64,000 nucleotides of DNA from Selaginella moellendorffii (GCF_000143415.4 NW_003314275.1:62001-126000); one strand, 5' to 3'. Shown: positions 7,818-56,572, counted from the first letter of the stretch. Made by a program: numbers and translations. The notes: generated by a model from the letters alone, not told the origin.

Positions 7818-8012
7818 TAAATATTACAGCCCTCTTGTGACCAAGTGTGTAGAAGAGTAGCTGTCAAAAAATCTACACTTAATATACTTAGTACAATATC
7901 AAAGACGTTGCCGTCTTCGGATAACAAACAGTTTCAAATGAATGGGAAGTACTGACCAAGTTTGAGTTGAACATCTGTTGCCAATTCGTCAAACAGGCCT
8001 TGGAATCTTGCT

Positions 8013-8019
8013 TATATAA
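8013..8019 (+). promoter_or_regulatory. Putative TATA box of the P450 gene
   Basis: TATATAA about 70 nt upstream of ATG 8089. Confidence 0.5.
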
Positions 8020-8088
8020 TACCTACAATCGTGCTCTGATCAAAACAGAGAGCTCTAGATCCATCCACCAGAAGAGAGCCATTTAATC

Positions 8089-9611
8089 ATGGTCATGGAG
8101 CAAGTCTGCACCAAGCCACAGCTGCCGCCCCAGCTGCCTCCTTCTCCAACTGGGCTCCCATTCATTGGGCATCTACATCTCTTGGGTAAGCTACCGCATC
8201 AATCCCTCCTCAAGCTCGCCCAGCAATATGGAGATGTCATGTTCCTCAAGCTTGGTAAAGTGAACACCCTGGTCGTTTCCTCATCCGATAGTGCCAAGGA
8301 AGTTCTCAACACCCAGGACCATATTTTTGGTTCGCGCCCCAAGACGACCTTCAGCGAGACAATCGGCTACGGTGGAGCTGGCCTGGCATTTGCAAACGGA
8401 GAAAACTGGAAGAGCACACGGAAGGTGTGCATGTACGAGGTTCTCACCACCAAGCGTGTGGAATCGTTCCACCCTATCCGCAAGTTCGAGGTGTCGCTCT
8501 TCATGAACGAGCTGCTCAAGGCATCGCGAGAGGGGTCTGTGGTGGATCTGAGCAGCAAGCTGTCGGATCTCACCTTCAATGTCATCTCAACAATGGTGTT
8601 GGGTAAGAGCTACTCGGCTAGCGCTCTCAGTGAGGCCGAGAAGAAAGAGACCATGTTTTTCAAGGAGACCCTCGACGAGGCTGCCATTATGGCTGGCTTC
8701 CATGCAGGCGACTACCTACCAATCCCCGACTGGATGGATACGCAAGTCAACAAGATCAAGCAGTTGCAGCGGGATCTGGACCAGTTCATCCAGAAGGAGG
8801 TTGAATCGCACCGTCAGCGGCGGGATCCTGGCCAAGCCCCACGGGACTTTGTGGATGTTCTCTTGTCTAACAGCCATATCAGTGACACCTCTATCAAAGC
8901 ACTGGTTGTGGTAAGTGCCGCTGACTTGAGTTGACTGGCGTTGACATGAATATGTGTTTATGTGTACAGGACATGGTGGGTGGAGGGACCGAGAGCTCCG
9001 CTGTGTCAGTTGTTTGGGCATTGGCCGAGCTGATCAAGAACCCACGGCTCATGGAAAGAGCCCAGAGGGAGCTCAAGGAGGTGGTAGGAGAGGATCGAAG
9101 CCTGGAAGAATCGGACATTCCCAACCTGCCTTTCCTGCAGGCAATTGTCAAGGAAACAATGCGCCTGCATCCCCCAGGGCCGCTGCTCATTCCGCACGAG
9201 TCAACCGAAGAGTGCGAAATAGGAGGCTACACCGTCCCAGCACGCACACGGACAGTGGTCAACATCTACGCCATCGCCAGGGACGAAGACAACTGGGAGG
9301 ATCCTCTCAATTTTGATCCAGATCGCTTCATGGGCAGCAACATCGATCTCAAAGGAAGACACTTTGAGTACCTTCCGTTTGGCTCGGGCCGGAGAATATG
9401 CCCCGGGCTCATGCTTGCAATGGCCACGGTCCAGTTCATTCTGGGCAGCGTGTTGCATGGGTTCAACTGGCGCCTTCCCGGCGGCCAGACAATCGACGAC
9501 CTCGACATGTCCGAGTCATTTGGGCTCACCGTGCCCAAGGCAGTGCCTCTCAAGTTGGTTCCTTCGCCACGCTTGGAGCCACAGATCTATGTCAAGTCGC
9601 TGTCCCCCTAA
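8089..9611 (+). CDS. Cytochrome P450, CYP71 clan (A-type); exons 8089-8910 and 8970-9611
   Basis: PPSPTGLPFIGHLHLL hinge, GGTESS I-helix, KETMRLHPPGP (ExxR), FDPDRF, haem motif PFGSGRRICPG; a single GT-AG intron at 8911-8969. Confidence 0.95.
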
Positions 9612-9671
9612 GACAACGGTTTATATCAATCGACAAAATAAAGAGTTACTTGGTCAAAACGAGATAAAGGC

Positions 9672-10696
9672 ATGTCTTTCGTAGCGAGCCATAGCAGATT
9701 CGTGCTGGCTATGGCGCACGTTCCAGATACTCAAGGCCAGGAGATTTCAGGATCAAGGCGGCAGTTAACACCCCACGACATGTGGGTGTGGAACGATGTG
9801 AATCACTGGAAGCATTGGCATGGCATTTGGGTCATGTGGCAGCCACTCTTGTCCCCTGCGGTGAACAAGGCCAATCGGTGCATAAGGTCGCTGCGTGCTG
9901 ACAACGAGGAGCGGACGCGGCTCTACCACCGGAATCAGTGGTTCCCCGTGGAGGATGATGCCAAGACGCCGGGATACACATGGGCGTATGGGCCATGGAT
10001 CATGGAGGAGGCCACTCACAGCCTACCCAATGGTATCTGGCACGGCGACAAGGAGGACTTCCGGATCTTACAGTTTGAGAACGGTGACCTGGGCTGGCTG
10101 CAACTAGAGCTCAAGCCAGACGATCCCAACTGTGTGGTCTTTGGTGAGGTTCACTTCATGCTCCCAGGTGAGGTCTTTCCTATACGTTGTCAAGTCATTG
10201 ATATGTACGTGTAGATAAGAATGGTAGAGCGCCCGTCATACTGGGATATGACAAAGACAAGCAGCTGGGAGCGGCCCTCATGCTGGAAGAAACATTAGAG
10301 TCGGATGACAAGCCTCCTCCCGCATGGCACGGCACGGTCTGGGAGCAACCGCGGGCCATGGCGCAACTGGAGCAGAGCCGTGATCCACCGCAAGGGAAGT
10401 TCATCGGCAAAGAGACGATACTAACCACGAGCTTGGTGCAGACCCAAAGGCAGGCCGAGTGGAATGGTTTCACTGGAGGAGTGGGCAACCAAGGCCTAGA
10501 CAACGAGTACGCTCTTGTTCACATGCCTTACAATTTCACAGCATTCGCTCCGGCCAAGCCAGCCATTGGTAAGGAGCATGCTTTTGGGGTGAGCTGGGTT
10601 ATGAGTGGTGACGAGGTGAGGATGATCTCCTGGAAGTATGGGGCTGATGGCAAGCTCCAGCATGTCAAGTCGGGCACTTACTATAAAGTGCAGTAA
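9672..10696 (+). CDS. DUF3598/BFA1-like two-beta-barrel protein (divergent); intron 10168-10214; ATG at 9672 or 9711
   Basis: A GT-AG splice joins two ORFs in frame. An N-terminal W-x-G-x-W strand and C-terminal APAKPAIGKEHAFGVSWVMSGDEVRMISWKYGADGKLQHV resemble the DUF3598 C-terminal barrel as I recall it. Confidence 0.6.
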
Positions 10697-10712
10697 GAGT
10701 GCAACACTAAGT

Positions 10713-13067
10713 TTATGCTTCTGTGCAATCGTCTTCCAGCTGCATCTCAAGGCTGTCTCCCTTGGACCACAAGGATCCCAGCTCGCCTCTTCGCCACCCT
10801 AGAGCAACGATTGTTCCTGGCGTGGCACAAAAGAGAAACCATCTCTCTCAAAATTTAGAACTTGTAAGCCATACCCAGAGTGCAAGGTACGATGTAGAGG
10901 AGGGCAGGTTGTCCATGCCCATGCATCACGTTCAATGCAACGTCCGTAAGAAACAAACCTGTACAATTTCCACATGACATTGTGTTCACAAAAGCCAGAG
11001 TATAATGGATGCTCACCCAGGCCATAGCCTATTATCGACCACAAAAAGTAACCTTCTCGCAAGCTTTTTCTAGTCACTGTGTCGAACCTGCAATGGTGTG
11101 TGTTAAAAAATGACCTCTTGTATTCCCCATACCTCAGAGCAAAGGATATTAAAAGCCCTGGAAGTAGTATATCACCAAAGCCTATGATACTGTATCCTCC
11201 CCAGGGGTCGTAAATCAGAGGTACTTTAAGGACCATTGGTATGCCTTCTCCAGCGGTTTTGTCACCCCGTGCAACCTGTGTGCATGGTTAACAATCCATG
11301 AAGATTTGCATCACATACATACCACTATCATAACACTTTGTTTGAAAATGAATGGGGAGATAAAAATCCAGAATATGTCGTAGAAGAAAGCGCATCCCAG
11401 AAGGACTGCCGACACCTGAGGATTCCACAGAGCTCTTAGATAGAGTGTGTGTGTGCAACAAGTACTCACCTTTATATTTGGAAGGTGCACAATCTGGAGA
11501 ACAGTGACAATGAGAGCAATGCCCTGCAAAAACGGAGAGCCTCACTTAGATACTCATGACTGGGTCAGTATGCCAATTGCACTCACTAGTATATCTTGAG
11601 CAATCCACGCAAAGTTTACATGCCGGTACACGGCCCACAGGACAGCGAAGGTGATGCAGAATGGTGACACAAGCATTGAGAGAACTGAGACGCTACCAAA
11701 GACGGGAAGGAGCACAAACTTTCGGCTTGTATGCGTAAACCACCTGGAATGGTTGAGCTAAGGCATATGTCAGGCACGAATCTAACTCACCTCGAAAGGA
11801 AAGCGACCAAGCAAGTTTGTAGCCCCTGTGCATACATAAGATGACGAAACTTTAGAACAAAGACACAAATTTACCTCTACTCCACCAAAACAGAAGATGA
11901 CGACCAGAAGCGTTAAGAACCATTTGGACATAAAAAAGTAGACGAGGATGAGGAACACCGAAGCAAAAACCGCAAACAGGACTGCCGACGTAACGGTGAC
12001 ATAGAGACCATTGCCGGCTGGAGTCGCGGCCACCGTGGAGGTGTGAGTAAGCGGAGCGTCTGGAGCGTCCTGCGTCCACCACCCAACCGGGAACTCAAAA
12101 ACTTAGTTTGCCCGCACACTGTGTACCTTTAGCCGTTTACAGCGCTCGTGAGCAGCCTCTTTTGCCTCCCAGGCAGACCAGAATGACGCGCAGAGGATAG
12201 TGCCCATGGCGATGAGCCACAGGCATACTTCGGCAACATCCACCAGGGGCCTTCCAGGCGAATCCATAATCACCCTGACTGGAACGAAAACATTGCAAAG
12301 TTGTGAAAACCATGTAGAGTTTTCACCTTTCTTGTTGGCCTCCAATGCACTCTGGAGGCTGTTGCCTGCAGACATGGGCAAAATGGCTGTGGGGATTTTG
12401 ATGTCCAAGGATGTGTCATTGTCGTAGCACACCATCTTGTAGAGCTCTGTTTTGTAACGTACCACCACCACCTTGTATGGTCAGGCACGAGTGAGAGTTC
12501 CAAGCCTTACCTTCCCTGTCGTTGAAGACGAGCAAGGCCACAGCGCCGGCAGACTGGGCAACTCGAGCCTTGGTGGTGAAGGAGCAGCCACCCCTCTGGA
12601 CCAGAGCAGCGCCTTCCAGCTGCACAAACCACAGCGCACCAACATTAACATTGCCTGAGGCCTGCGTCGGTACCACTTGCCCGCTGAGACGTGTTGACAC
12701 AGCCATCCGGTGAATCCAGCAGAGCCAGGGGCAGGAAGTGTTCTTCACGCCCCAGCGTCTTGAAGGAAGCTCCAAACCTGGCACTGATCCCCACATACTC
12801 CTTGGATTCCACCGCGTCAATCCAATTCCTCACCTTCACCTGCCATAACTCTAACACGCCTCACTACAAGCAAGCAAGCGCGGATCACGTTACCAATTCG
12901 AAGTTGTTGTCACAGCCCAGATGCTTGGGTGCATCCTCGTCATCGTGAGATACATCATTGTCTCCTCCTCCTCCGGTGGCGCCACATCTCGATATTAGCA
13001 CAAAGAGCACCACCACCAAGACACGAGCAGCTCCCAGCTTGTTACTGCCCGGCGAAGAGAGCGCCAT
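10713..13067 (-). CDS. SPPL: Signal peptide peptidase-like aspartyl protease (SPPL2/4 type) with PA domain, multi-exon
   Basis: Signal peptide; PA domain ([20 protein letters not shown]); YDIFW motif; [10 protein letters not shown] (GxGD); [10 protein letters not shown] (PALL). Confidence 0.93.
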
Positions 13068-13230
13068 TTCTCCGGCCCAAGCCCACTCACGCTCTCACTC
13101 TCTGTGAGTTAAGTTACCCGTCCACCTCCATCCAATGCTTGCTGTCGCCATAGCCGACCCCTCCGTGCCCGTCAACTGACGGGCGTGCCCATCACCGTAC
13201 GAGGTAAAAAAACATTCTTTAATCAGTAAG

Positions 13231-16200
13231 TTAAAACGCCTTTACAAGTTCGTTCTTCATGGCCAGGCCCAGGGGACGCAGCTCGGCTCCATCCTCCAAG
13301 CTCGATCCCGGGAGGAGAAGCGAGCGGGCGCCCACGAATGCGTACTCCCCAACGCTGTTGCTGCCAAAATGCACGTCGCCGCCGCCCTCGTACACGTGAC
13401 CAAAGAGTAGCGCGTCTCGCCCAATGCTGCTGCCGGTCTTGACGCTCAGGCGGTCCGGATTGAGAGCATACAGTGTGTCCATGTACACACCCACGGTGTC
13501 GATGCTCGCTCCCAGCTGCCGGAGGTAGCCTGTAGAGAGTGCCGAGCCTTTGGTGAGGTCGAGGAAGTAGCCGCACGCAACCGAGTTGACGCACTGCCAC
13601 ACCGTGTCCTGGAGGCTCCTCAATCCCCATAGCTCGCTCCTGCTCTTCTCCTGCACGCCCTTCCTTCCTCCAACCAGGATCCTCCTCGCTGAGATGCTGC
13701 CCAGGGACAAGACGAGAGCCGATACCATGTACGAGAGCAGGACGAGTGCCAGGAACAGCCAGTCGCTGCGGGGTGCTCGAGACGCGATCAACGCCGCCGG
13801 GAGGAGAGCTGCAAGCTGAGAGAGCCCGAGGAGAGTAGCGGGGGCCAACAGCTGCAAGAGTGGCTGCATGCTTCGAATCAAACCGAACTTGAGCCTCGTT
13901 TTGGCAGTGGCCGTCGCCGTCTTGCAGTTGGTTTCCGGCAGCACTGCCAGGTTGGGCGGAAGGCATCCGGATAGAGCAGGGCAACCGATGTTGCCGTCGT
14001 TGGAAATGTCATTGGCGAGAGGCACGTCTGAGTCTCTCAGGAGCGCTTTCCATGCACCGGGCAGCTCTGCTCCGTTCCTCACGTACTGAGCAATGTCGTA
14101 GGCCACCGACCTCCCGTGGTCTATGGACGCCGACTCCCGCAAGCTGGTTGCCGGGATCATGTCCAGGCTCGGCACACCGTTCCTGGGGTTGAACCTCATC
14201 GCCTCTGTCAGTGCGGGGTCGACAAGCTCGTCAAGGTGTATGGCGGCAACGTCCACATAAGGGAAAGCTTGCTCGTCCCACGCGCGGGTGCAGTCGATAG
14301 CGAGGTCCCTCTCGGCTAGGCTGTCGGGAACTGGGCGTAGCTGGAGCTGGAGCACGTAGTCCACGCCTTGCGGGGACGCAAGCCTCCGTGCAAAGTCGTC
14401 TCGCAGATAGCTGGGTGAACGCTCGTCTTTGTCTCGTCGAGGCAGCGCGCCGGTGTCCGGCGGGAGCACACCCTCCCGTGCAATCCGTCCTTCGTCAACC
14501 CCATATTGCGGATCCAGTGGCCTCATTCGGAACCTCACGTACCATTCTCGCTTGGGTGACGAAGCCGACTTGAAAAGCCTGGAAACGTTGGAGTAGTAGT
14601 GCAGCTCGGCATATGAGTTGCCCAGACGTAGAGAGTCCCACACTGCATCGCCTCTGTGCGGGGAGTCTTTCACAATCTCCTCCCTGCGCTTGCTGCTCGT
14701 CGTCAACCACGTAACAAAGTCGGCAATATTTCTGGCGTAGAAAGCCTGGCCAGTCTTGAGCGTGAGATCCACAAGTGACTCGTGAACCGAACTGTGGTCG
14801 TGCCTCAGGATTCGCAGCGAAGCACCGCGGGCATCTGGCCTGGCATCGTCGTCCGAGCTCAAGCTGTTGCTGTGCCTCACAACAACCGAATACGACTTCC
14901 CCTTGGAGAAGACATCGTGGCGGGGAAAGCTGCTGTCCAGGTCTTCCAGCACAGTGAGGCGTCCCTTGCCACATATCCCAGCCCTGTGGAAGTACCTCGA
15001 TTTGACGGAATGGCTCGTTTTGCCTATGTGAGCCGAGAGGTTGGCCACCGTCTTTCTGTATTCCGCGTCCATGGCCACAATCCTGCTGTCTTGCTCGTGA
15101 GCTACCGAGGCATGGTTGTAGACCATTGTTGGATTCTCTACGCCCAGGTACACACCACCCTGCTTCAGTGTAAAGCCGCTTGTTGCTACAGACAAGGCTC
15201 CCAGCCACGAGCTTTCCTCCATGCAGGAGCCAGGCATAAGCACGCTCTGTGCTCCAACCACGCAGCCTGTCCCGACGTCAAGCTTCGCGTAACAACCGTT
15301 GTCACTGGTGATGACTTTTGCAAAGTCGCCCAAATGAGATCCACTTCCCAGGTCCAGTAAATCTGGGTCCAGTATAAGGTTTTTTTTNNNNNNNNNNNNN
15401 NNNNNNNNNNNNNNNNNNNNNNNNNNNNNNNNNNNNNNNNNNNNNNNNNNNNNNNNNNNNNNNNNNNNNNNNNNNNNNNNNNNNNNNAAAAAGGAACAGA
15501 GTTTATTACGACGAGCAGTCAGCTGATTGGCCCGCACCACCTTTGTGGTCATGAAGCTTCCAACCAGTATCATTTCAGAAGCCAAGTCATCCAGCAGAGG
15601 CTGGCACCATAACCGATATAGGCACATCCCATGCACAGCACGAGCGCCAGCAGCTTCCCCTGAAGAGCAACGTATATCAAGTAGTCGACGATCGAGCTCG
15701 GGTCTTGAAACACTGAGAGCGGAATTGCAGCAGTCACGGCCCAAGGGAACGTTGACAAGAGCGATGACACTATATAGCCTGTTTGTGATTCCCTTGCTCC
15801 AGCCGGTAGGATACCGAGCTTGTCAACGAGCCACACAAAAACCACGTATCCGACCACCCCGGAGATCGCAGATACGAGGCTCACAACGTACAACCCGGCT
15901 GCTTGACACAATGTGTACAACATTGTGCTGTTCTTGTCCTGCAAAGACAAATGGTAAGAAGCCAAAAGAAATGAAAAGAAGCAATCACCTGTCGACGTGA
16001 GGGGTGAACTTTGGAAGAATCATCCTCAAGGTGACGAACTCCAAGCTGGCTGGTTCCATCAACCTTACCCAGTGGAGACACCGACGTGGCCCTCAGGGAT
16101 GCACCAAGGCCAATGAAAGAGTAGGGACCGATGGAACACCTCCGTCCTATTCTGATGGGCTTGAACTGGACAGCACCGGCTTTCACCTCGTGGCACTGCA

Positions 16201-19200
16201 GGGTTGCACCCTCTCCGATGGCAGCACCGTCACCCAGCACCACAAGCCAAGGGTCTGTAATATCTGTTGTCTCCAGCTCAACTCCGGATCCAATCTGTGC
16301 TCCCAGCAGACGGTACCACCAGTTGACAAAAACCGTTCCCCGCAACTGATTCGCTACTATCCTGGCCGATGCGAAATCCTGGAGCCTGTAGCATGTCCAC
16401 CACCTTACGAAGTTGAGCGACCACAGCGGGACTGTGGTCCGAAGATGAAGCACCGGAAGCAGGAAGCTCGTCCCAAGACTGGCTGCCAACGCCGTGGCTG
16501 CCATGTAGAGCAACCAGCACAAGGGAGCACAGAGCACCGTAGCAACAACAGGCCGGTCTGCAACCAGGGACGTGAACTGCCTCAGGATAAACGCTGCAGG
16601 GACGAGGAGCGTCCATGCCACGTAAATGATGCCCAGGAGCTGTAGAAAAGTGATGCACACTTGGCGTTGGAGCGATGGAAGAATGCCGGATTCCAGCTGA
16701 GAGTCCGTCACGATCTCGCCCTCAAAATCGTCATCTGTATAAGGTCCCCCGCGGCACGATGACAAGCTAGCTTTATCATCGATTTCAGTGCCCTGCTGCT
16801 GCTGCGTTACTACTGTCTTGCCGACGAGACCGTCCACCACGTCACACAGCTCAGATATGCAACCAGCAGTGTAGATGTCGATGGCCGCAACGTGAACTCC
16901 GAGAAAGTTGGATAGCTTCTGTGATGCCCACACCACCGCAACGGAATCAAGGCCGTAGTTTGCAAAGCTTTGGGACGGCGACAGCTTGGACATGTCGATG
17001 CCTGTCCGTTCGGAGATGATCTGGCAGATGAAGTTTGAGATCTCGGTCTTGCTCGGCCCCTTAGCCGAGACATCGGTTTCTGGTATCGCAGGTGGCACTA
17101 CTGGCTGCGAAGACGTAGAGGACTTAGTGGTGAGCACCAGGCTCTCGACTGAGTCGGCAAGCTCTGAGATGCAGCCGGCCGTGTAGATGTCTATAGCAGC
17201 AACGTGAACTCCCAAGAAAGATGAGAGCTTGTGAGCGGCCCACACGACAGAGCTCGAATCCAGTCCATAATCTGCGAAGCTTTTCGTGGAAAGGACTTGA
17301 GCCTGAGATAATCCCAACTTTTCAGCCAGGATCTCCGTCAGGAAGCTAGTAACCTCGGCTTTGCTACGAGCAACACTGGCAGCAGACGGTGGCGGCGTCG
17401 GTGGTATCACGCCAGGAGTCCCACTAAAAGTTCTCGACCTTCGAAGCCTTAGAATTTTCTTAGTCTTCTCAATCGTGGGACTTATGCTGTCTAGCCTGTC
17501 CTCAGTGAACTGCTTCAAACAGTCAAGCCTCCGTATCTTTCCCGATGAAGTTTTTGAGATCGTTCGCGGCTTGACGAGCCTCACCGAAGCGACACTCAAG
17601 CCATGCTCACTCGCAACCATAGAGGAAATGTGTGCAGTGAGCTGCTCGGGATCAACCTTTGATTCGTCTCGCACTTCTGCAACCACCACCACCCCAACTT
17701 CGTCCTCGTCACAAACTTTGATCCCTTTGGAGTGGAGGGCTCGTCCAGGCGCACCAAAAGCAGCACAGCATCCAGGCCTGAGTGATCCGGAGCATGCTTC
17801 CACGGTCTTTTCAATGTCGGACGGGTAGACGTTCCGGCCCCTGATGATAATCAAGTCCTTGATCCGCCCAGTCACAAACAGCATGCCTTTGACCACCCTT
17901 CCCAGGTCGCCAGTCCTGAGAAACCTGTTAGCTTCTTCACCGCCTTCTAACCTTGCATGAAAAGTGTCCTGACTGAGCCTCTCGTTTCCCCAGTAACCGG
18001 CACCATTGCTCGGACTTCCCACCCAAATCTCTCCCTCCACACCGTCTCCCACTTCCACGCCAGTCTCTGGATCTACGATCCTCACATCCACGTCCGGGTT
18101 GCCCCTGTCCACATACCCGCAGCAAACCTTGCCTTGCCAGTCCACAACTAAAGGCCTGCCCCGCCCCCATGCAACGCTGACGAACACACAGTTCTCGGCC
18201 AGTCCATAACCAGGAGCAACAACCTCTTCCTTGAGCCCCGAGCTTTCCATGGTCTTGAGAAATCTCTTGAGCGTGGAGCTTCTTACCGGCTCGGCACTGA
18301 CCATGAGGAACTTGAGGCACGAGAGCTGGTACGTGATGCCGGGTTGTTGGTTCATCTTGTTGACGACGAGATCAAACGCAAAGTTGGGTGCCGCGCTGTG
18401 CGTTGCCTCGTACTTGCTCATGGCCTCGAGCCACAACAAGGGCCTCCGGATGAAGTTCGTGGGCGACAAGAGAATGGCGGTGCCACCACTCACCAGCGCA
18501 GTGAAGAGGCCCCCGATGAGACCCATGTCGTGGTACTGCGGCAACCAGCTCACCAGCACCGTCCTGGACGTGCTCTTGTACCGCCGCCGCATCAGCTTCA
18601 CGTTGTGGATGAGAGCGGCGTGGGTGATGATGACGCCCTTGGGATCGCCAGTAGAGCCCGACGTGAACTGGAGGAAGCAGCATCTTTCACTCTCCTCGGC
18701 CTCCCCGCGACCCCTAAAGTAATCCTCGGCCTCTTTGTTTTGCTTGGAAACCCACAAGTCGGTGTGCATCCAGGGAAGCTTTGGCCACGACGGTCGGCCG
18801 CCGGACCTCGACAGCAAAGTGTCTCGGATTGCTGACGCGCGCACGGCGGTGTGGTAGGCGACTGTGGACAGGATGGCCTTGGCACCGCAGGCGGCTGCCA
18901 CATTCTCCACTTTGGCCAGCGCATGGGAAGAAGAAGAGGAGCTCCCTCGACTCGCGACGTCCGGAGGGATGAGGGGCACCGGCAACACCTATAGATAGCA
19001 CACGAAGGTAAGCAAACAAAGCTTTCTCCTCTAGATCTCCACGACTTACATTAGCGCGCAGGCAGCCAAAGAAGGCCTCGATGAATTCCAGGCCGGGGTT
19101 GTAGAGGAGAAGCACTCGGTCCCCGTCATGGAGCGTGACCTTGTGGGTGACGAGATTGTGGGCGATGGTGTTGGCGTTGTTGTGGAGCTGAGCGTAAGTC

Positions 19201-20959
19201 CTGGAGCCTGATTCGTCACCCTTGTCGTCCAGCCAGGTGTAGAGGACCTTGTCCCTCGCCACGCTGTGCTTGGCATAGAAGTGGAGGTAAGAATCCAGGC
19301 ATGGAAGGTCGGGAAATTCACCGCCCGTGGCCTCACTCGTCACCTCCAAGTCGCCACCCTCGGCTTCATCAAGCTTGATCGCTGCGCCCGTGATCAAGTT
19401 CTGCAAAGTTTGCTTAAAGCTTAGAAACGCAGAAGAAAAAGTTCCACCTTGACTTTTGCGGGCGTTCCAAAGTTCTTGGCGATGAGGTTCATCGCGTACG
19501 CCGCATTGCGCTCCGTGAGCTCGAAAGCAAACAGGCCTCCTACATAGTAAGTATCGTTGCATCCTTGTAGCGATTCAAGCCGGTCGTATAATCCAGATCT
19601 CATATCTGTGAAACCAGAAAGAAACATGTAATGCGGGGATAGAAAATTGTAGTGTGTGTTTACCTTGCGAGCCAATGTGGGGGAAGTAGTTCCATTTTCT
19701 TTGCAAGACAATGCGTTCCACAGTGCCACCAATACGTGCCACGTCCTGGAGCAACAGCGCGGTCATCATCTCCTGGCTGACTTGAGCAGTCCCATACGAC
19801 CAAAAGAGATAGATGTTGGTGTCGGCATAGAATTTTTGCATGGCCACCGGGTGACCAATCTCCTTTGCATCTTCAACATTGTCTTTGAAATAGTAAAATC
19901 CGGCCGGGAACTTGTTCTCGAATCCCGAGATCTCCAGAACTGTTGTGTAGTAGTCCATAGTCCGGACCCTGCTGAAGAGGCTGGCTTCTTCGTCTCCAAG
20001 TGTCATTAGCTCCGCGCCTGGTGGAGCAAAGGGTATCGCTCCCGAGATGACGATCTTGTCGAACTCGAGCTCCTCTGATTCCTCGCCCCCGTCCGAGCTT
20101 GAAGTGCAAACTGTGACTCCTCGGCCGGATCCTCGTCTCCGGATCTCCGTGACTCTGGTGTTCAATCGCACGCGAGGTAGCAGCCTCGCCACTCCTTGCC
20201 ACAAGCCGGTGTAGCCGCCCTTGATCCTGCAAACCTTCCCAAACATTGAGGTGCGAACGAACTCGTGCAAATACGCATAGGGGATATCCTGCTCGTGTGG
20301 GAAGCCATATCCAGAAGCCGTGTAACCAGTGGCAACAGCCTCTGGTATTCTTCCCATGCCGTGCTTGGCCGCAAATTCGGCTGCTGTCTCCGGTGCAAGG
20401 CTGCTAAGTGCGTGAACTCCAGTTTTACCAGTTGATGCTGCTTGTGCCTGATCAGAGACAATATCTATTATCAAAACCCTCGATGCATGGTTAAATCACC
20501 TGAAGGTCAAGAGTGATCTGGATCATGGAGATGTAGTCCCTGGCTATCCCAAGATCTTGGTACGTGCCAGTTTTGGAGTCGACAAGGCTGAGCTTGTGAG
20601 CCGCCATGTCTTCCATGCCAACTCTGGCCACTTGCGCGAGATGCTTGATGTTGGGAGCACTCTCCCGGGCAATCACCTGACCACCCAAGTCATACGGTCG
20701 CCCTGCCAACCGTGTCAAAATTTCACCAGTGATTGATTAGTGTTGAAGCATGTATATTACCTTGGATGTCCACGCTCTCACACATTCCTCCCACGGTGTG
20801 GTGCTTCTCAATAAGTGTGACTTGCTCATATCCCAGCTTCCACAGCGCATACGCTGCGGAGACACCGCTGGGTCCTCCCCCGACAACGCAGATCCTGCTG
20901 CTTCTTGAGAGCGACGGGTGAAGCTCCTCCAGCAGCTCATGGACTGCCGACGCTTCCAT
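13231..20959 (-). CDS. Multidomain NRPS/PKS-like megaenzyme (~2300 aa): FAD PUFA-isomerase/amine-oxidase-like domain, fatty acyl-AMP ligase (FAAL-like), two ACP/PP-binding domains, TM+LbH, TM+LbH, catalase-like (AOS-type) domain, TM+LbH
   Basis: Exons link by GT-AG introns. FAD domain: GGGPSG...EK...VGGMC. Adenylation: FLQFTSGSTGDPKG, WLPQYHDMGLIG, GYGLAE, FLRTGDLG, GRIKDLII, KTSSGKIRR. Carriers: two YGLDS motifs. Beta-helix: LGAQIG/LGASID hexapeptide repeats. Catalase fold: RYFHRAG...VRHSNS...DARG...RSVAY. An assembly gap and an apparent frameshift (~15573) lie inside the gene. Confidence 0.88.
15388..15487. other. Assembly gap (100 N)
   Basis: Run of N inside the megaenzyme gene. Confidence 1.
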
Positions 20960-21070
20960 CTTTCTCGATGGATCAATTCGCAACTAAAGTTGTAAATCAC
21001 ATATATCCACACAAGAGATCTCTCTAGAGCTGTGTGGTAAAGCTATAAGCCGGCTGGCTCGCTCGAGGAA

Positions 21071-21078
21071 TTTATATA
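21071..21078 (-). promoter_or_regulatory. Putative TATA box of the megaenzyme gene
   Basis: TATATAAA on the minus strand about 110 nt upstream of ATG 20959. Confidence 0.5.
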
Positions 21079-21615
21079 GCGCGTATGCAAGATCATAAAG
21101 GCAAACAAGGGGGAAGCGGCCAAGGGGACAACACCAAAAACAACGAGTCGTCGGCATTGGCGAGAGCATACACACTGAATATCTCTATTGCGATGCCGGG
21201 ATATATGAATATACCGGCCTTGTTTGTCCTGCGCTCACTAGGAATAAGAGATTCCAGGTGGAGGCATTTTTACCCCGTCTCTATACGCCAGAGTTGACAA
21301 AACCACATAGCCGAATTTCGAGCGACCAACATTGAGTGGACGAGAGAAAACGTATGAACTTTTAGCAGATAAAACAACCACAACGTTCACCACCCAGCCA
21401 AGATGCATCTATAGGCGAGAGATGAATGAAGATGCTCAGGTTTGCATCCAACAGGACTAATCCAAAGGTTGAGGTTATTTTAAACGAAAAGTGGCGATCG
21501 TGGATGGAATATGCCCATTGATGAGAAAAGCAAGGGATCACGGAGCTCCTGGTAAGGTACGAAGGAATGTAGGTCTTGCGCGGCACCAGGCGCCAGATCC
21601 ACACCCGCGCCCGCC

Positions 21616-23917
21616 ATGAGGAGCCGGAGCGATCCCGCCCACTGCACGCGCACCCTCCTCTCCCTCACATTCCTCGCGGTGCTCGTCTGCTCCGTCTACT
21701 ACACCCTCTTCCTCCGATCTCGCCTCCACTCCGTCCAGCAGGGCCAAGGCCACGGGGATTTGCCCAGGAGCTCCAGCAAGGTAGCAATCACCACCGGCAT
21801 TTCTACTGCCGCTGTCGATGAAGAAGAAGATGGCGTTGCCAGCCACTCGGAGGAGGTGGAGGAGGACGGCATCCACAGCCATAAGCTAGCGGAGGAAGAA
21901 CAGTCCGACGATGCGGTGGAGACCACGGCGGTGCAAAGTTTCCTGGTACGTACGGCAGTGCAAAGTCTAAGGTTTTCTTTTTAAGTCTCACGCTTCTTGA
22001 GCTCACATCTCCTACAATGCAGGTGTGTGACGAGAAGTTCACCGAGATAATCCCGTGTCTCGACCGGACAATGCTGACTTACTTGAAGAACAAACCAAAC
22101 TACACGCTCATGGAGCACTACGAGCGGCACTGCCCTCCTGCCGACAGGCGGATCAATTGCTTGGTGCCTCCTCCAGCCAACTACAAGGTAAGCGAGGAAT
22201 TCCGTGTTTTCTCTCGTGACGAGTGAGACTGTGTTTGTCGATCAGGTGCCGATAAAGTGGCCTGCAAGCCGAGATCAAGTGTGGCGTGCGAACGTGCCTC
22301 ACACATTTCTGGCATCCGAAAAGTCTGACCAGCACTGGATGGTGATCAAGGGAAACAAAGTCATCTTCCCAGGAGGAGGCACTCACTTCCACGATGGCGC
22401 TGATAAGTACATTGCCGGGCTTGGAAAGGTAGGCACACTCTTCATCTCCATTGTAGCGATGAACGTCTCGACGTCTCCCAGATGCTCAAGAATCCCGACG
22501 GAGACCTCAGCAGCAAAGGGAAGATCCGGACTGTGCTAGATGTCGGCTGTGGCGTTGCAAGCTTTGGTGCTTACCTTCTGCCGCTCGACATCCTTGCCAT
22601 GTCCATGGCCCCAAACGACGTGCACGAGAACCAGATCCAGTTTGCTCTGGAGCGAGGCATTCCATCGACGCTGGGTGTTCTCGGGACCATGAGGCTGCCC
22701 TTTCCGAGCAAAGCTTATGATCTGGCGCATTGCTCTCGGTGCCGTATCGAGTGGGCTCAGCGGGATGGCATTCTGCTGTTGGAAGTGGACAGGGTGCTGA
22801 GACCGGGGGGATACTTTGCGTGGTCGTCACCAGCGGCTTACCGAGACGACGACGAGGACAGAAAGGAATGGGACGAGATGACCAGCTTGACAAGCCGAAT
22901 GTGCTGGTCCATTGCTGCCAAGGAGGGCCAGACTGTGATCTGGATGAAGCCACTGACCAACGAATGTTACAAGGAGCGGCCGAGGAACACCAGGCCTCCT
23001 CTGTGCAGTCGACAAGATGATCCTGACGCAGCATGGCAAGTGAAGATGAAAGCTTGCCTTGTGCCACTGACCGAGCGTACGTATAAACACAGCTTCCCCT
23101 TGCCAGGTTTCTCACTCGTCCGCCACCTTGCTGGCTAAACAGAGAACGATGCCATTGGAGGCAGCGGATTGTTGCCGTGGCCCGAACGTCTGGTTGCACC
23201 TCCGCCGAGGCTGGAAGAGCTACACATTAGCGACAGGGATTTTGAGGCAGACACGGTATGGTCTTTGTCCAGATCTCGCTCGCTAGCTTGTTGACACGGT
23301 GATTGGAGTTTGCTTTGCTAGGCTGCATGGAAGGACAAGGTTGAGGCGTACTGGGAGAAGCTCGAGCTAGTGAAAGATTTCAGCGTTCGCAACGTTATGG
23401 ATATGAAAGCTCACCTGGGTGGCTTTGCGGCTGCGCTCAAGGACAAGCCGGTGTGGGTGATGAACGTAGTGCCTGCCAGCGGCCCAAGCACGCTCAAAGT
23501 CGTCTATGAGCGTGGACTCATCGGCTCATATCACGACTGGTAATCAGCTCGAGCGTTGCACCGGTGCACTAATGTGGGGTCTTTGATGCTAGGTGCGAGT
23601 CATTTTCTACGTACCCGCGTACCTACGACCTGCTGCATGCGTGGGACGTGCTCTCGGACGTAGACTCCCACGGCTGCAGCGTCGAGGATCTCCTCCTTGA
23701 GATGGACAGGCTGCTTCGTCCCATGGGATACGTTATCATCCGGGACTCGCCCGTGATGGTGGATCAGGTGAAAAAGTACCTTGGGCCCCTGCACTGGGAT
23801 GCTTGGGTCCAGGAGTTCCCCGCGGAGTCGGATATGATGCAGGACAACGAGGAGGCCGTGCTGCTGGTCCGAAAGCGCCTGTGGAAACCAGGCTCGGCTT
23901 TTGGGCAAGCGAGGTAG
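21616..23917 (+). CDS. Probable SAM-dependent (pectin) methyltransferase, PMT/Methyltransf_29 family, multi-exon
   Basis: Type-II TM anchor; IPCLDR, EHYERHCP, FPGGGTHF, VLDVGCGVASFG, HENQIQFALERG, HCSRC, RNVMDM, FSTYPRTYDLLHA. Confidence 0.93.
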
Positions 23918-24129
23918 CATAAGCCGTGCTATCCTTTTTTCAATCGTTTTGGCTCTGGTTAGCTTGTCCTTGGAAGCTTTTGCGCAAGCTGAGAAAGAAA
24001 ATGGCTGTGGAGATGACTTTTAAGTTGTTTCTCAGCTCTTTCTCATATCCAGTACTGAATTCACAGCATCAGTGAGGGAGAGGAGAACGCTGGAAATGCT
24101 CCTCAAGACTTCTACCTGGCATAGATCAG

Positions 24130-26280
24130 AGTGCCCATTTAATTGAAAAAATTAGGATTAATTAGTGAGAATTACTAATAATCATAGAGTTAAAGGAATA
24201 TTTTAATCCACGTGACACTAAGGCAATTTTGTAACAAAGATCTTGGTCATCCAAGATATTCCTCTGCGATTGGGTGCTCAAGATCTTTGTTACAAGACAA
24301 CAAATGAGGATTTGTAATCTGATTTTAAGAAATTTAGCTGATATAACAACAGAAAGGGTTAAATTAGGCCTCCCCTTTTCTAAAGCATTTAAAAGTGTTT
24401 AACAACACTTAATAATATTCTAAAGAGTGTTTTTTAGAGAAATCTCATAGTCTACCAGTAGTAATACAGTGGCTTTGTGTGTTCCATGGCCAGTTAGTGG
24501 CAACATAGTGGCCCTAGGATTGTGATTTTGAATTTTAGAGTGTTTTTGAGGAGTTAAATTTTCAGAGTGTTCTTGAGAAGATTGAGAGAGTTTGAGGGAT
24601 AATTTTGGAGCAAAAGAGAGTGCTTCACAGCCTGCTAGCAGCAATGCAATGGTCTTGAGCAAATCTAAGTAATAAAAGAGTGTGCTTAGTCTCTTTCCTA
24701 AGGATGTGTAACAGTGGGGGAATTGGGGGTAATGGTTTAAAGCCTCCATCCTACTAGTTTTAAAGTGGCTTATGACTCACCAATGGAAACACAGTAGCTT
24801 TAAACTGTTTGCATCATCCTCTCTCACGTAAGATTCCTCGGCCTCTCCCGCGTCTTCCGGCCCCACTGCCCTCTGACTGAATATGGTTCTAATTGACTGT
24901 GGTTCTATGCAGCACAATAAGGAATCAAGGCTTCTAGCTCAATTGTTGGTCTTTCCAGCTAACAAGTGAATTGAGTAGCCTTGGATTTGTTTGACCTCCC
25001 TTACTATAGCCACTTTTGTGTTTTTTGGAGGGACTTGCCCAGGTGGGCTACATGATAGATTTGGGATATTGTGTGAACACGTGAGTGAATGGGTGAGTTC
25101 AATTATTCAACACACTTAAGTTATCAGAGGAGATGAGTTGACATCCTACACATAAGATGTAGAGGGGGTTTAATAGGAGCTTTTTGGGAAAAAAAACGGA
25201 TAAATGGAAGTAGATTATATAGGCTTTTGGGATTTTAATAGAGGGTTGATTGTTGAGGAGATAAGTGGATGGAGAAGCATTAATAATTGTAGAGACTACA
25301 AATTATAAAGAAATCATAAAGATCTTTATATATACCTCAAGAGTAGAGGGATATAAGAAGTCAAAGGTAGCAATGAATAAGTGAAAAGTTGAGAGAAAAT
25401 CTCAAGTGGTCAAATTTGAGATGAAGTAGTTGTAGGAAAAGGAAAATAATTTCCTTAGATGCAAAAATTCTTAAGATGCAGAGTGAGAAGGAATTTATAA
25501 GTCCAGCAAAAGAAAATAGCTAGAGGAAGTCAAGTGAAGCCAAAATGGCTAGTAAAGAATTTATGTGAAGAATGTTGCAAGGATAAAAGTTGCAACATTC
25601 TAGCTAAGAGAAGTTGTAGAAGCTGATACAGAGATAATCAACTTCTAAGACAAAAGATTCCATATCTATTAGTTGAAGTGGAATTTACAAATTGAGTATG
25701 ATTTTGGTAAAGATGCATTTGACATTGCATCCTAATTGGTGGTAAGGTGGTACAATTGTACCATTCAGGCAAGGATAAAAGATCCACTAGGATATTCCTT
25801 TACATTAGATCTTTGCTATGAGACAAAGCATGAATGAGGATTTGTAATCCAATTTTAGGAGATTTTGCTGGGAGTAGGAGATATGAGGAACAAGAAGGAT
25901 TAACTTGTGCCTCCTCTTTTCTGAAACATTTAAAGTGTTTAGCAATGTTTAGTAGTGTTTAACAGTGTTTTTATAAAACTTAGAATGGAAGTGTTTTTCA
26001 GAGAGATTTCACAAGAGGTGAGATTTCTTGTGAGGAATCCACTCTTTGTCAAAGGAGAATGAACCAGATAGCCTAAGGGCAAGAAGAGAAAATTCTTTCA
26101 CTACCAGCCCTGAGAGCAAGTGGGAAGAAGAAGACCAAATGGCAAGATTTCCAATCTTCACCACCCAAGTGTAGGAACCAATTCCTGCCACTTCATTATT
26201 TGCTAATATGCTTAGCTTGTAATGCTTCTCAAAAGAAGTTCTTTGACAGTCACAACCTCACTTTATTTTAACCACCTTTT
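24130..26280. repeat. AT-rich non-coding block with a diverged internal direct repeat (~24250-24445 vs ~25785-26010); probable decayed transposon
   Basis: Shared blocks gatattcct...agatctttg...aatgaggatttgtaatc...cctcc...catttaaagtgttt occur in both copies; no credible ORF; boundaries approximate. Confidence 0.45.
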
Positions 26281-39829: not shown

Positions 39830-40068
39830 ACCTGATGATGCGCTCGCTAAAAACCTAGGAAGGATTATCGCCCAACAGCCAGGGATGATCCAATGTGGAA
39901 CCATCTTTCTCTGACAGCTTCCACTCAAGAGAAAGCATCTTGGTATCATAAGTATTATCAAACTCTTAGAACTCAGACAAAATGCTGACACAGTACCTCT
40001 CCCTCTCTCTCTTCCTTGCTCTCTTTTTGAAGCGCAGCTTCCACTCAAGCAAAAGGTCTCTTGGTTTC

Positions 40069-55938: not shown

Positions 55939-56572
55939 CGCCTCCAATCATCTCTCCAAATCTGGATAACAATAAACTTGGTCTCAAAAGGAAGGCCTTA
56001 TATCGTTCCGGAAGACTGGTCGTCGCCAAGAACCGTAAAACACGCCTGTCAACGGTCAAAGACATCAAAGTGTATGGCAATCTCTTTGGTGGTTCTTCTG
56101 ATAACATTTTGTATGAATTTGTCTGAATTTTATGTTTGACTACTAAAACGTAATTTAAAAAATTATTACTTGAACAAAATACAAAATGTCTATGAACAAG
56201 GTATCCATGTCTTAGCTTGAAGTTCAAGAGCTTGCTGAGGGTGGTGGTCGCCAGCAAGAATTCTCCAAGCCAGACATTCTGTTCAGGAACTCCTATAATA
56301 TACGCTAAAGGGAGTAGAGCATTCTTTTCCAGTAGCGCTGAATCATCGATCCAGCTCTCTCGACAAGGCACACATATGTTGATCAAGCTTTAAACGCCAC
56401 CCCAGAACGCTCGGCAACTTATCACTCCACCCCCCAAAGCTTCTTTCCCTCGTCGACAACCGCCGGCAGTTCTAAACTCTGGCAAGGTCTGCTGGCGAAA
56501 CAATTCCGTAGGGTTCTTGCGCTGGAGAGGTAGGGCTCCTAGAGGCGAAGAAGAATGAGGGATTCTCAACGA

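What the first reader, a model, noticed from the sequence alone, without database searches (positions are those of the whole stretch)
13231..20959. Plant-encoded fatty-acid assembly-line megaenzyme (isomerase-FAAL-ACP-ACP-membrane/LbH modules-catalase/AOS)
Seen in sequence: one intron-containing gene of ~2300 aa fuses several domains in order. These are an FAD domain (~19450-20959), an adenylation domain with FAAL-type motifs (LQFTSGSTGDPKG, WLPxYHDMGLIG; ~17480-19300), two phosphopantetheine carriers (GLDS Ser at 17255-17257 and 16943-16945), three transmembrane+hexapeptide modules and a catalase-fold haem domain (~14080-15030). Established: FAAL-ACP units load fatty acids onto PKS/NRPS lines in bacteria independently of CoA, and thiotemplate megasynthases are essentially uncharacterised in land plants. 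I recall similar architectures annotated as hypothetical 'AMP-ligase' proteins in some plant proteomes, with no known product. Inference: a self-contained, membrane-anchored pathway that isomerises, activates, tethers, oxidatively rearranges and then transfers or polymerises a polyunsaturated fatty acid. The product could be a new oxylipin conjugate or a lipid polymer.
Basis: partly seen in the sequence, partly recalled or inferred. Interest (0 to 1): 0.95.

Follow-up and report, generated by a model that had tools for sequence, protein, structure and literature searches.

The report
Plant membrane fatty-acid megaenzyme gene
This is a real, very large Selaginella gene for a membrane-anchored enzyme that fuses a fatty-acid-activating unit with a flavin domain, a haem domain and a bacterial-type polymerase/transferase tail; it is conserved from liverworts to crops, nobody knows what it makes, and here an assembly gap has damaged the annotated gene model.

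Summary
A minus-strand Selaginella moellendorffii gene (20959-13234; JGI model EFJ28539.1, 2385 aa) encodes, in order: a flavin domain, a FAAL-type adenylation domain, two carrier domains, and three (2 TM + LbH) modules. A haem domain is inserted after module 2.

Tools refine the labels:
- The flavin domain is a full-length homolog of the P. acnes polyunsaturated fatty acid isomerase, not HemY.
- The haem domain is closest to coral catalase-related allene oxide synthase, but a distal Asn-to-Lys change is invariant in 103 orthologs.
- The tail is colinear with bacterial Pls/PosA polymerising synthetases (hhalign E 1.5e-41).

The N gap lies inside an exon. The annotated 245-nt "intron" bridging it is an artefact that deletes 85 conserved residues. 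The second copy (GL377602.1) reads straight through.

The family (~2300 aa) spans liverworts, ferns, conifers, grasses and eudicots. Two papers noted it in passing (eLife 2021; Protein Sci 2026), with no function. The scan also noted the other copy (s1-419356).

Most likely mechanism (inferred): CoA-independent loading of an unsaturated or oxygenated fatty acid onto the carrier, tailoring by the two redox domains, then Pls-type transfer to a nucleophile, possibly repeated.

The parts
13231..20959 (-). Whole gene (start ATG at 20959-20957, stop TAA at 13233-13231). JGI model exons: 20959-20761, 20702-20500, 20447-19664, 19605-19448, 19400-19050, 18988-15989, 15938-15608, 15362-13234.
   Evidence: P0001 maps exactly onto these exons with GT-AG introns of 47-61 nt, apart from the artefactual one. 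P0001 = EFJ28539.1 of Selaginella moellendorffii.
19448..20914 (-). PAI-like FAD domain (residues 16-448, spanning three small introns). GxGxxG motif at 20881-20864.
   Evidence: PDB 2b9w (P. acnes PUFA isomerase) E 1.9e-27 over chain residues 2-422 of 424; other flavoproteins match only the first ~80 residues. 2B9W identity confirmed in PMC13003489. GxGxxG conserved in 103 orthologs.
19382..19447 (-). Linker intron joining the flavin and FAAL exons. Two alternative 47-nt GT-AG introns keep the frame: 19447-19401 (JGI model of this copy) or 19428-19382 (JGI model of the other copy).
   Evidence: The second choice gives VKVELFLLP, which resembles the ortholog motif VKRLFPL. Without splicing the frame stops at TAA after 10 codons, which is the RefSeq 456-aa model P0151.
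17459..19307 (-). FAAL-type adenylation domain (residues 480-1075; intron at 19049-18989). A3 at 18664-18635, A5 at 18208-18194, A10 Lys motif at 17548-17528.
   Evidence: NCBIfam FAAL families E 5e-88 to 1e-73. The best PDB hits are all FAALs (7r7e 1e-94, 3kxw 2e-78, FadD23/FadD32 8e-72 to 2e-66), against an acyl-CoA ligase at 1.7e-21. Motifs invariant in 103 orthologs. A5-A6 segment is 53 aa against a bacterial median of 69.
17159..17386 (-). Carrier domain 1 (Ser codon 17257-17255).
   Evidence: PP-binding, 2 stretches. YGLDS motif. Present in only 14 of 103 orthologs.
16838..17071 (-). Carrier domain 2 (Ser codon 16945-16943).
   Evidence: PP-binding. Ser conserved in 103/103 orthologs.
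16049..16666 (-). Module 1: TM1-TM2 plus LbH domain (Pls C1 equivalent).
   Evidence: Hydropathy. TIGR02353 stretch and WcaF-type LbH hits. Colinear hhalign to Pls/PosA.
15573..15938 (-). Module 2, first part: TM3-TM4. The open frame continues past the annotated donor (15608) to LLK at 15573.
   Evidence: RefSeq model P0152 ends at this LLK followed by the stop.
15376..15572 (-). Unreliable stretch: stop TGA at 15572-15570 created by a 1-nt loss, a second 1-nt loss at 15561-15560, ~65 nt unrelated to the other copy, N gap 15388-15487, then ~12 nt unrelated. It should encode the start of LbH 2; in all, 85 conserved residues are missing from the annotated model.
   Evidence: DNA alignment with L001. 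Ortholog alignments.
15109..15375 (-). Module 2, rest of the LbH domain (Pls C2 equivalent). Coding resumes right at the gap edge, upstream of the annotated acceptor at 15363/15362.
   Evidence: The frame reads NLILDPDLLDLGS, matching the ortholog consensus INAVxDPDLL.
13984..15066 (-). cAOS-like haem domain inserted between LbH 2 and TM5. Distal RYFH at 14997-14986, Lys at the distal Asn site within 14766-14743, proximal Arg/Tyr within 14118-14095.
   Evidence: PDB 1u5u E 7e-26 against catalases at 4e-3 or weaker. AF2 model pLDDT 81.8; Foldseek top hits 3dy5/1u5u at E 1e-20, TM 0.74. Residue conservation.
13234..13881 (-). Module 3: TM5-TM6 plus LbH domain (Pls C3 equivalent).
   Evidence: TIGR02353 E 1.3e-17 against profile positions 444-685. 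Hydropathy. hhalign.

Best explanation
This is one gene for a membrane-anchored, NRPS-like lipid enzyme of about 2470 residues. It belongs to a family conserved across land plants.

Shown here: the domain identities, their order, conservation of the catalytic residues in every domain, and the artefactual gene model at the gap.

Inferred mechanism:
1. The FAAL-type domain adenylates a long-chain fatty acid, probably polyunsaturated or already oxygenated. It passes the acyl group to the phosphopantetheine arm of the fused carrier domain(s), without a CoA intermediate.
2. The PAI-like flavin domain (double-bond isomerisation or a related allylic redox step) and the cAOS-like haem domain (a peroxide-dependent rearrangement or oxygenation) tailor the chain, either before loading or while it is tethered.
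3. The Pls/PosA-type tail (six TM helices, three LbH domains) takes the place of a thioesterase. It releases the acyl group by transfer to an amine or hydroxyl acceptor at the membrane, possibly repeatedly, as Pls does with lysine.

The window copy is most likely intact. Its apparent stop and frameshifts lie within ~85 nt of the assembly gap and look like poor read ends.
For: One gene:
- Exact 8-exon model.
- The flavin-FAAL-carrier-LbH-haem fusion recurs at ~2300 aa in about 100 orthologs from Marchantia to grasses and eudicots, annotated by many pipelines.
- In-frame 47-nt introns at the flavin/FAAL junction.
- The RefSeq second model starts inside the adenylation domain, leaving conserved FAAL N-terminal coding sequence unannotated.

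Loading: FAAL families and solved FAALs are by far the best matches. A3, A5 and the A10 Lys, and the carrier Ser, are invariant in 103 orthologs.

Tailoring: full-length PAI homology at E 1.9e-27. cAOS is the closest by sequence and by fold. Distal His 103/103, proximal Arg 103/103 and Tyr 102/103 are conserved.

Release: bacterial Pls/PosA synthetases are the nearest non-plant relatives of the tail. hhalign gives probability 100%, E 1.5e-41, with 669 colinear columns. The six-TM plus three-tandem-domain layout matches the published Pls description (PMC7179176).

Intact copy: 27 synonymous against 18 non-synonymous codon differences and no indel or stop in 7155 nt compared with the other copy. 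All defects are confined to the gap flanks.
Against: - No activity was measured and no transcript data were seen here.
- RefSeq splits each locus into two genes.
- The A5-A6 segment, where bacterial FAALs carry their specific insertion (location from my own knowledge), is ~15 residues shorter in the whole plant family. CoA rejection is therefore not assured.
- TIGR02353 scores 178 bits against a cut-off of 423.
- The distal haem pocket has Phe and Lys where cAOS has Thr and Asn, so the chemistry may differ from allene oxide synthesis.
- No lipoxygenase domain or neighbouring LOX/CYP74 gene was found.
- The acceptor nucleophile is unknown.
- The ~65 nt before the gap do not resemble the other copy at all, so a real rearrangement in this copy is not excluded.
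Confidence: 0.55

Rival explanations
1. The flavin and haem domains work as an oxidase/peroxide pair, not as isomerase plus allene oxide synthase. The flavin domain would oxidise or desaturate the acyl chain with O2 and release H2O2. The catalase-fold domain would then either destroy that H2O2 or use it for peroxygenation of the same chain. Loading and release would be as in the main explanation.
For: The flavin domain belongs to the amine-oxidase superfamily (Pfam Amino_oxidase). The haem domain keeps the catalase-type distal His and the proximal Tyr/Arg. The residue before the His is hydrophobic (Phe), as in true catalases (Val, from my own knowledge), and not Thr as in cAOS. No LOX is present to supply a fatty-acid hydroperoxide.
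Against: The only full-length structural relative of the flavin domain is PAI, which (from my own knowledge) consumes no O2. The haem domain is much closer to cAOS than to catalases (E 7e-26 against 4e-3; TM 0.74 against ~0.6). It lacks the distal Asn of catalases (Lys in 103/103).
Confidence: 0.2
2. The locus is two or more separate genes, as in the RefSeq annotation: a ~456-aa flavoprotein, and a separate FAAL-carrier-LbH-haem protein. The JGI fusion would then be a prediction artefact.
For: RefSeq models XP_024531099.1 (456 aa) plus XP_024531098.1 (1049 aa) at this locus, and 465 plus 1832 aa at the other copy. Reading through the linker intron reaches a stop after 10 codons.
Against: The RefSeq second protein begins at MHTDLW inside the adenylation domain, so it lacks the N-terminal ~170 residues of the ANL fold that exon 5 and the start of exon 6 encode and that orthologs conserve. 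Fusion proteins of ~2300 aa are predicted in about 100 other plants, including RefSeq models. Two in-frame 47-nt GT-AG introns exist, matching the size of all other introns in the gene.
Confidence: 0.1
3. This window's copy is a damaged allele (pseudogene). On this reading, the stop at 15572-15570, the two frameshifts and the unrelated flanking sequence are real and reflect a rearrangement or insertion in module 2.
For: A TGA stop and two 1-nt losses, followed by ~65 nt with no similarity to the other copy. The true content and length of the gap are unknown.
Against: Everything else is clean. No indel or stop occurs in 7155 nt of CDS, and synonymous changes exceed non-synonymous ones, 27 to 18. 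The defects are homopolymer losses right at a contig end, typical of poor read tails. The gap-spanning distance is 179 nt against 187 nt in the other copy.
Confidence: 0.1
4. The adenylation domain is not a strict FAAL. It would make acyl-CoA (or use another thiol) because the FAAL-specific insertion is reduced, and the carrier domains would serve another purpose.
For: The A5-A6 segment is 52-55 residues in 93 of 103 plant orthologs, against a median of 69 in 130 bacterial FAAL loading domains.
Against: A carrier with an invariant Ser is fused directly downstream in all 103 orthologs. Sequence similarity to FAALs is far higher than to acyl-CoA ligases (1e-94 against 1.7e-21). eLife 2021 classed plant sequences with bacterial FAALs on CoA-rejection features.
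Confidence: 0.07

Closest known systems
[quoted passage not shown]
   Same: Adenylation domain, carrier domain, then six TM helices interleaved with three tandem LbH-type domains and no thioesterase (PMC7179176). The plant tail aligns colinearly with it (hhalign probability 100%, E 1.5e-41; phmmer E down to 3e-27).
   Different: The loading domain is FAAL-type, not an amino-acid A domain. A PAI-like flavin domain sits at the N-terminus and a cAOS-like haem domain is inserted between module 2 and TM5. TIGR02353 scores below its cut-off (178 against 423 bits). The host is a eukaryote and the gene has introns.
Bacterial FAAL-ACP loading didomains of PKS/NRPS lines (e.g. PDB 7r7e, 3kxw, FadD32)
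   Same: Best sequence matches; core motifs A3, A5 and A10 are kept; a carrier is fused in cis.
   Different: The A5-A6 segment is ~15 residues shorter. There is no downstream KS or C domain; release is by a Pls-type tail.
Catalase-related allene oxide synthase of the coral Plexaura homomalla (PDB 1u5u, 3dy5)
   Same: Mini-catalase fold (TM 0.74). Distal His and proximal Tyr/Arg are kept; 25-26% identity.
   Different: Thr66 is replaced by Phe and Asn137 by Lys in essentially all plant orthologs. It is not fused to a lipoxygenase. It is embedded in a membrane protein.
[quoted passage not shown]
   Same: Homology over the whole 424-residue chain at E 1.9e-27, with the FAD-binding motif.
   Different: The plant domain is fused to a FAAL, whereas PAI is a soluble stand-alone enzyme acting on free fatty acids (the latter from my own knowledge). 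The region around PAI residues 80-147 is not aligned.
[quoted passage not shown]
   Same: Same family, and for the 2026 paper the same two Selaginella loci.
   Different: Neither paper reports the Pls/PosA-type tail, the PAI or cAOS affinities, the invariant distal Lys, the shortened A5-A6 segment or the gap artefact. The 2026 paper reads the two loci as a duplication flanked by mobile elements, but they are colinear at ~99% over at least 17 kb.

Membership tests
Fatty acyl-AMP ligase (FAAL) | ANL core motifs (A3 P-loop, A5, A10 Lys) | tested here: met
   TSGSTGxxKG, YGLAE and SGK are invariant or nearly so in 103 orthologs.
Fatty acyl-AMP ligase (FAAL) | Closer to characterised FAALs than to acyl-CoA ligases | tested here: met
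   PDB FAALs at 1e-94 to 3e-58 against FACL 3g7s at 1.7e-21. NCBIfam FAAL families rank on top.
Fatty acyl-AMP ligase (FAAL) | FAAL-specific insertion of about 20 residues after motif A5 (location from my own knowledge) | tested here: inconclusive
   The A5-A6 segment is 52-55 aa in 93/103 plant orthologs against a median of 69 in 130 bacterial FAAL loading domains. This means a reduced insertion; its structural role was not tested.
Fatty acyl-AMP ligase (FAAL) | Transfers acyl-AMP to holo-ACP and rejects CoA | not testable with these tools
   Only the cis-fused carrier with an invariant Ser speaks for it.
Pls/PosA family NRPS | Six TM helices with three tandem C-terminal LbH-type domains, colinear with Pls | tested here: met
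   Hydropathy. Module repeats and matches to Pls/PosA proteins. hhalign E 1.5e-41 over 669 columns.
Pls/PosA family NRPS | Score above the curated TIGR02353 cut-off | tested here: not met
   178 bits in 3 stretches against a cut-off of 423.
Pls/PosA family NRPS | Amino-acid-activating A domain | tested here: not met
   The loading domain is FAAL-type.
Pls/PosA family NRPS | Iterative polymerisation of the tethered monomer onto a free acceptor | not testable with these tools
   Needs biochemistry.
Catalase-related allene oxide synthase (cAOS) | Catalase-core fold with a proximal Tyr ligand and Arg, and a distal His | tested here: met
   Alignment to 1u5u. Conservation: His 103/103, Arg 103/103, Tyr 102/103. 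Foldseek top hits 3dy5/1u5u.
Catalase-related allene oxide synthase (cAOS) | Distal Asn (Asn137) and Thr before the distal His (Thr66) | tested here: not met
   Lys in 103/103 and Phe in 102/103 at these positions.
Catalase-related allene oxide synthase (cAOS) | Partner lipoxygenase fused or adjacent | tested here: not met
   No LOX domain in the protein or among the neighbouring genes.
PAI-type polyunsaturated fatty acid isomerase | Full-length homology to PAI with an FAD-binding fold | tested here: met
   2b9w E 1.9e-27, chain residues 2-422 of 424. GxGxxG conserved.
PAI-type polyunsaturated fatty acid isomerase | Isomerase activity on cis,cis-dienes without net redox | not testable with these tools
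   The PAI structure paper is not held in the library, so active-site residues were not checked.
HemY / protoporphyrinogen oxidase (the label used in eLife 2021) | Homology beyond the dinucleotide-binding motif | tested here: not met
   1sez matches only residues 18-82, at E 1.5e-3. NCBIfam PPO models score 19-24 bits, against cut-offs of 98 (TIGR00562) and 517 (NF008841).

The most novel reading that the evidence does not exclude
The enzyme is a membrane-embedded polymerase for a lipid polymer or oligomer that has no known synthase. It would tether oxygenated polyunsaturated fatty acids on its carrier, and its Pls-type tail would join them head-to-tail (ester or other links) while extruding the chain across the membrane. 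The product would be an oxylipin-derived estolide or cutan-like material specific to land plants.
Probability: 0.1. Interest if true: 0.9.

Novelty: new variant of a known kind. Interest (0 to 1): 0.68.

Why it matters
Land plants are usually said to lack thiotemplate (NRPS/PKS-type carrier-based) assembly lines. Here is one that is conserved from liverworts to rice, tomato, soybean and poplar, with every catalytic motif under purifying selection, yet it has no known product.

The enzyme joins three chemistries that have been studied only separately and in other kingdoms: bacterial conjugated-linoleate formation, coral allene-oxide chemistry, and bacterial polylysine-type polymerisation. Finding its product could reveal a new class of plant lipid conjugates or polymers.

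A single-copy ortholog in Marchantia polymorpha (MpACOS18) makes the question testable by knockout.

Practically, the analysis shows three things about the public record:
- The JGI model at this locus lacks 85 residues because of the gap.
- The RefSeq models split the gene.
- The 'duplication' reported for Selaginella is most likely two haplotypes.

Tried and rejected
- HemY/protoporphyrinogen oxidase identity for the N-terminal domain: rejected. Only the Rossmann motif matches.
- True catalase: rejected. Matches are weak (E 4e-3 or worse) and the distal Asn is absent.
- A 245-nt intron across the gap: rejected.
- Oxylipin gene cluster: the neighbouring P450 is CYP71-clan, not CYP74. The other neighbours are a methyltransferase, a PA-domain signal peptide peptidase, DUF3598 and an ADH.
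- Bacterial operon context: two scans of bacterial/archaeal genomes, with the haem-domain and flavin-domain alignments, found no relative.
- Stand-alone relatives of the haem domain: the word-index search returned only plant fragments of this same family.
- Nearest non-plant FAAL hits (a Flavobacteriales tandem FAAL-ACP, a FAAL-PKS, a Chrysophaeum FAAL-ACAD fusion) lack the flavin, LbH and haem parts.
- Pseudo-trimer packing of the three LbH domains: the 1145-residue model has pLDDT 70. Not testable here.
- Literature searches by gene identifiers and by MpACOS18 found nothing.
- A UV-induced FAAL-clade gene in Mesotaenium (bioRxiv 10.64898/2026.02.10.704744) could not be tied to this family because no gene identifier is given.
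- One script used wrong alignment settings. Its numbers were discarded and the analysis redone.
- The PAI structure paper (PMC1413795) is not held, so PAI active-site residues were not evaluated.

Full report
**What is there**

The finding lies on the minus strand. Long open stretches in three frames are joined by very short introns. Protein P0001, returned by an exhaustive search with the largest exon, maps onto the window with no mismatch as eight exons. The start is ATG at 20959 and the stop is TAA at 13233-13231. Six introns are 47-61 nt and one is 245 nt.

P0001 is EFJ28539.1, SELMODRAFT_410953 of Selaginella moellendorffii.
- NAD_binding_8/Amino_oxidase.
- AMP-binding, with NCBIfam FAAL families on top (E 5e-88).
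- Two PP-binding domains.
- The Pls/PosA NRPS terminal domain TIGR02353.
- A catalase-like region.

**The assembly gap**

The 245-nt 'intron' (15607-15363) contains the N run 15388-15487 and is an artefact.

- Five homologs, and later the second Selaginella copy plus twelve orthologs, all have conserved residues exactly where P0001 jumps. Against the second Selaginella copy the deficit is 85 residues.
- That second copy (P0153 = EFJ20474.1, 2439 aa, on GL377602.1, fetched as L001) reads through the region as one open exon. It encodes the end of TM4 and the start of the second LbH domain.
- In the window, the reading frame continues past the annotated donor to ...WLLK. A TGG codon then reads TG, which creates TGA at 15572-15570.
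- A GGG run then reads GG. The next ~65 nt up to the gap, and ~12 nt after it, do not resemble the other copy.
- Coding sequence resumes at the gap edge (NLILDPDLL, matching the family consensus), upstream of the annotated acceptor.
- The distance between the last matching bases is 179 nt here and 187 nt in the other copy.
- Elsewhere the two copies differ at 45 of 2385 codons (27 synonymous, 18 non-synonymous), with no indel or stop.

I read the defects as poor read ends at a contig break. The frame across the gap cannot be established from this window alone. With the missing part, the product would be about 2470 residues.

**One gene or several**

RefSeq splits each locus. At this locus it gives a 456-aa flavoprotein that reads into the fourth intron, and a 1049-aa protein that starts at MHTDLW inside the adenylation domain and ends at the stop near the gap. 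At the other copy it gives 465 and 1832 aa.

Several results argue for a single gene:
- The RefSeq split leaves the conserved N-terminal third of the adenylation domain unannotated.
- Two alternative 47-nt GT-AG introns join the flavin exon in frame to the FAAL exon in both copies. One of them preserves an ortholog motif.
- The same fusion, at about 2300 residues, is predicted in about 100 other land plants by many pipelines.

A single gene is the best reading. Transcript evidence was not available here.

**Domain identities**

*Flavin domain.* It matches the P. acnes polyunsaturated fatty acid isomerase (2b9w) over the whole chain at E 1.9e-27. Every other flavoprotein, including protoporphyrinogen oxidase, matches only the dinucleotide-binding motif. 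That 2B9W is PAI is stated in PMC13003489. The published label 'HemY' (PMC8460268) is therefore imprecise.

*Adenylation domain.* Its best solved relatives are all FAALs (1e-94 to 3e-58), against 1.7e-21 for an acyl-CoA ligase. One qualification applies. The segment between motifs A5 and A6 is 52-55 residues in 93 of 103 plant orthologs, against a median of 69 in 130 bacterial FAAL loading domains. To my knowledge this segment is where bacterial FAALs carry their specific insertion.

*Carriers.* Both have YGLDS. The second carrier's serine is invariant. The first carrier exists in only 14 of 103 orthologs: Selaginella, Marchantia paleacea, Cryptomeria and grasses.

*Tail.* Three pairs of hydrophobic helices are each followed by an LbH domain. 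The nearest non-plant relatives are bacterial Pls/PosA synthetases. A profile-profile comparison gives probability 100%, E 1.5e-41, with 669 colinear columns spanning all three modules. Pls is described as an NRPS with A and T domains, six TM helices and three tandem domains (PMC7179176). TIGR02353 scores 178 bits, below its cut-off of 423. This is a divergent relative, not a member by the curated rule.

*Haem domain.* It sits as an insertion between the second LbH domain and TM5.
- It matches coral cAOS at E 7e-26, against 4e-3 or weaker for catalases.
- An AlphaFold model (pLDDT 81.8, pTM 0.82) has cAOS as its top structural match (E 1e-20, TM 0.74), ahead of catalases (~1e-13, TM ~0.6).
- The distal His and the proximal Arg and Tyr are conserved in 103, 103 and 102 of 103 orthologs.
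- The Thr before the His in cAOS is Phe here. The distal Asn is Lys in all 103.

The Lys is thus a family trait, not a Selaginella oddity.

**Distribution and prior knowledge**

Full-length orthologs occur in liverworts (Marchantia paleacea; M. polymorpha MpACOS18), ferns, a conifer, grasses and many eudicot families. No Brassicaceae appear among the 120 listed hits. This suggests loss there but does not prove it.

All names are automatic or 'hypothetical'. Searches by gene identifiers found no paper. Two papers mention the family:
- eLife 2021 notes plant FAAL-like domains between HemY and catalase domains, of unknown function.
- Protein Sci 2026 lists both Selaginella loci as antiSMASH 'NRPS-like' clusters and calls them a duplication flanked by mobile elements.

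The two loci are colinear at about 99% over at least 17 kb, including four neighbouring genes. From my own knowledge, the Selaginella assembly holds both haplotypes, so they are most likely alleles. The scan itself had already noted the other copy (s1-419356).

**Mechanism**

The shown facts are the domain set, its order, and purifying selection on every catalytic motif. The rest is inference from the named families.

1. The FAAL-type domain adenylates a long-chain fatty acid and loads the fused carrier.
2. The PAI-like and cAOS-like domains, whose characterised relatives act on polyunsaturated fatty acids and their hydroperoxides, tailor the chain.
3. The Pls-type tail, which replaces a thioesterase, transfers the acyl group to an amine or hydroxyl acceptor at the membrane, perhaps repeatedly.

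The weak points are these:
- No lipoxygenase is present.
- The distal haem pocket is altered.
- The FAAL insertion is shortened.
- The acceptor is unknown.

A serious rival is that the flavin and haem domains form an oxidase/peroxide pair. The most novel reading that the data do not exclude is a membrane polymerase for an oxylipin-derived lipid polymer.

**Verdict**

The gene belongs to a family already noticed in print but uncharacterised. It is best described as a new variant of Pls/PosA-type carrier-based synthetases. It merits experimental follow-up, for which Marchantia offers a tractable ortholog.

Noticed in passing
window 13231-20959 and L001 6001-13745: Public gene models disagree. 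JGI fuses everything but bridges the gap with a false intron here, and drops 24 residues of the flavin domain in the other copy (P0153). RefSeq splits each locus in two and starts the second protein inside the adenylation domain.
   Followed up: yes
window 7248-24127 vs L001 2851-19745: The two Selaginella loci are colinear at ~99% identity across the gene, the intergenic DNA and four neighbouring genes. They look like two haplotypes, not the mobile-element-flanked duplication described in Protein Sci 2026 (PMC12820801).
   Followed up: partly
window 24347-25250 (L001 1789-2626): Just beyond the methyltransferase gene, identity between the two copies drops to ~82% with many indels, in an AT-rich stretch (GC 0.365 at 24001-26000). 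This may be a divergent repeat or transposon remnant.
   Followed up: no
window 34924-40907: A large minus-strand ABC transporter gene (ABC_membrane and ABC_tran domains in ORFs at 34924-35691, 36597-37382 and 37394-40048). The second assembly gap (N run 40454-40846) lies at or near its 5' end.
   Followed up: no
window ~7250-13100 (L001 13909-19745): Downstream neighbours are a PA-domain signal peptide peptidase, a DUF3598 protein, a CYP71-clan P450 (best PDB hits ferruginol and sugiol synthases, not CYP74) and a zinc alcohol dehydrogenase. No obvious oxylipin link.
   Followed up: partly
window 1457-3388: Copia-type reverse transcriptase (RVT_2, E 1e-74) in a 643-aa ORF. It is probably the RVT_2 that the 2026 paper lists near the GL377579.1 locus.
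   Followed up: no
window 51120-52943, 53710-55947, 56555-58015: Two intronless PPR protein genes on opposite strands, and a BTB/POZ plus At2g24240-like beta-propeller gene.
   Followed up: no
family alignment of 103 orthologs: A tandem carrier domain occurs only in Selaginella, Marchantia paleacea, Cryptomeria and grasses; most eudicots have a single carrier. The two Selaginella carriers are 55% identical.
   Followed up: partly
P0008 (1854 aa, unnamed public assembly): A GC-rich, low-complexity-rich homolog with the same FAAL-carrier-LbH-haem layout and near-identical haem motifs. It may come from an alga, which would push the family's origin before land plants. Its organism is unknown.
   Followed up: no
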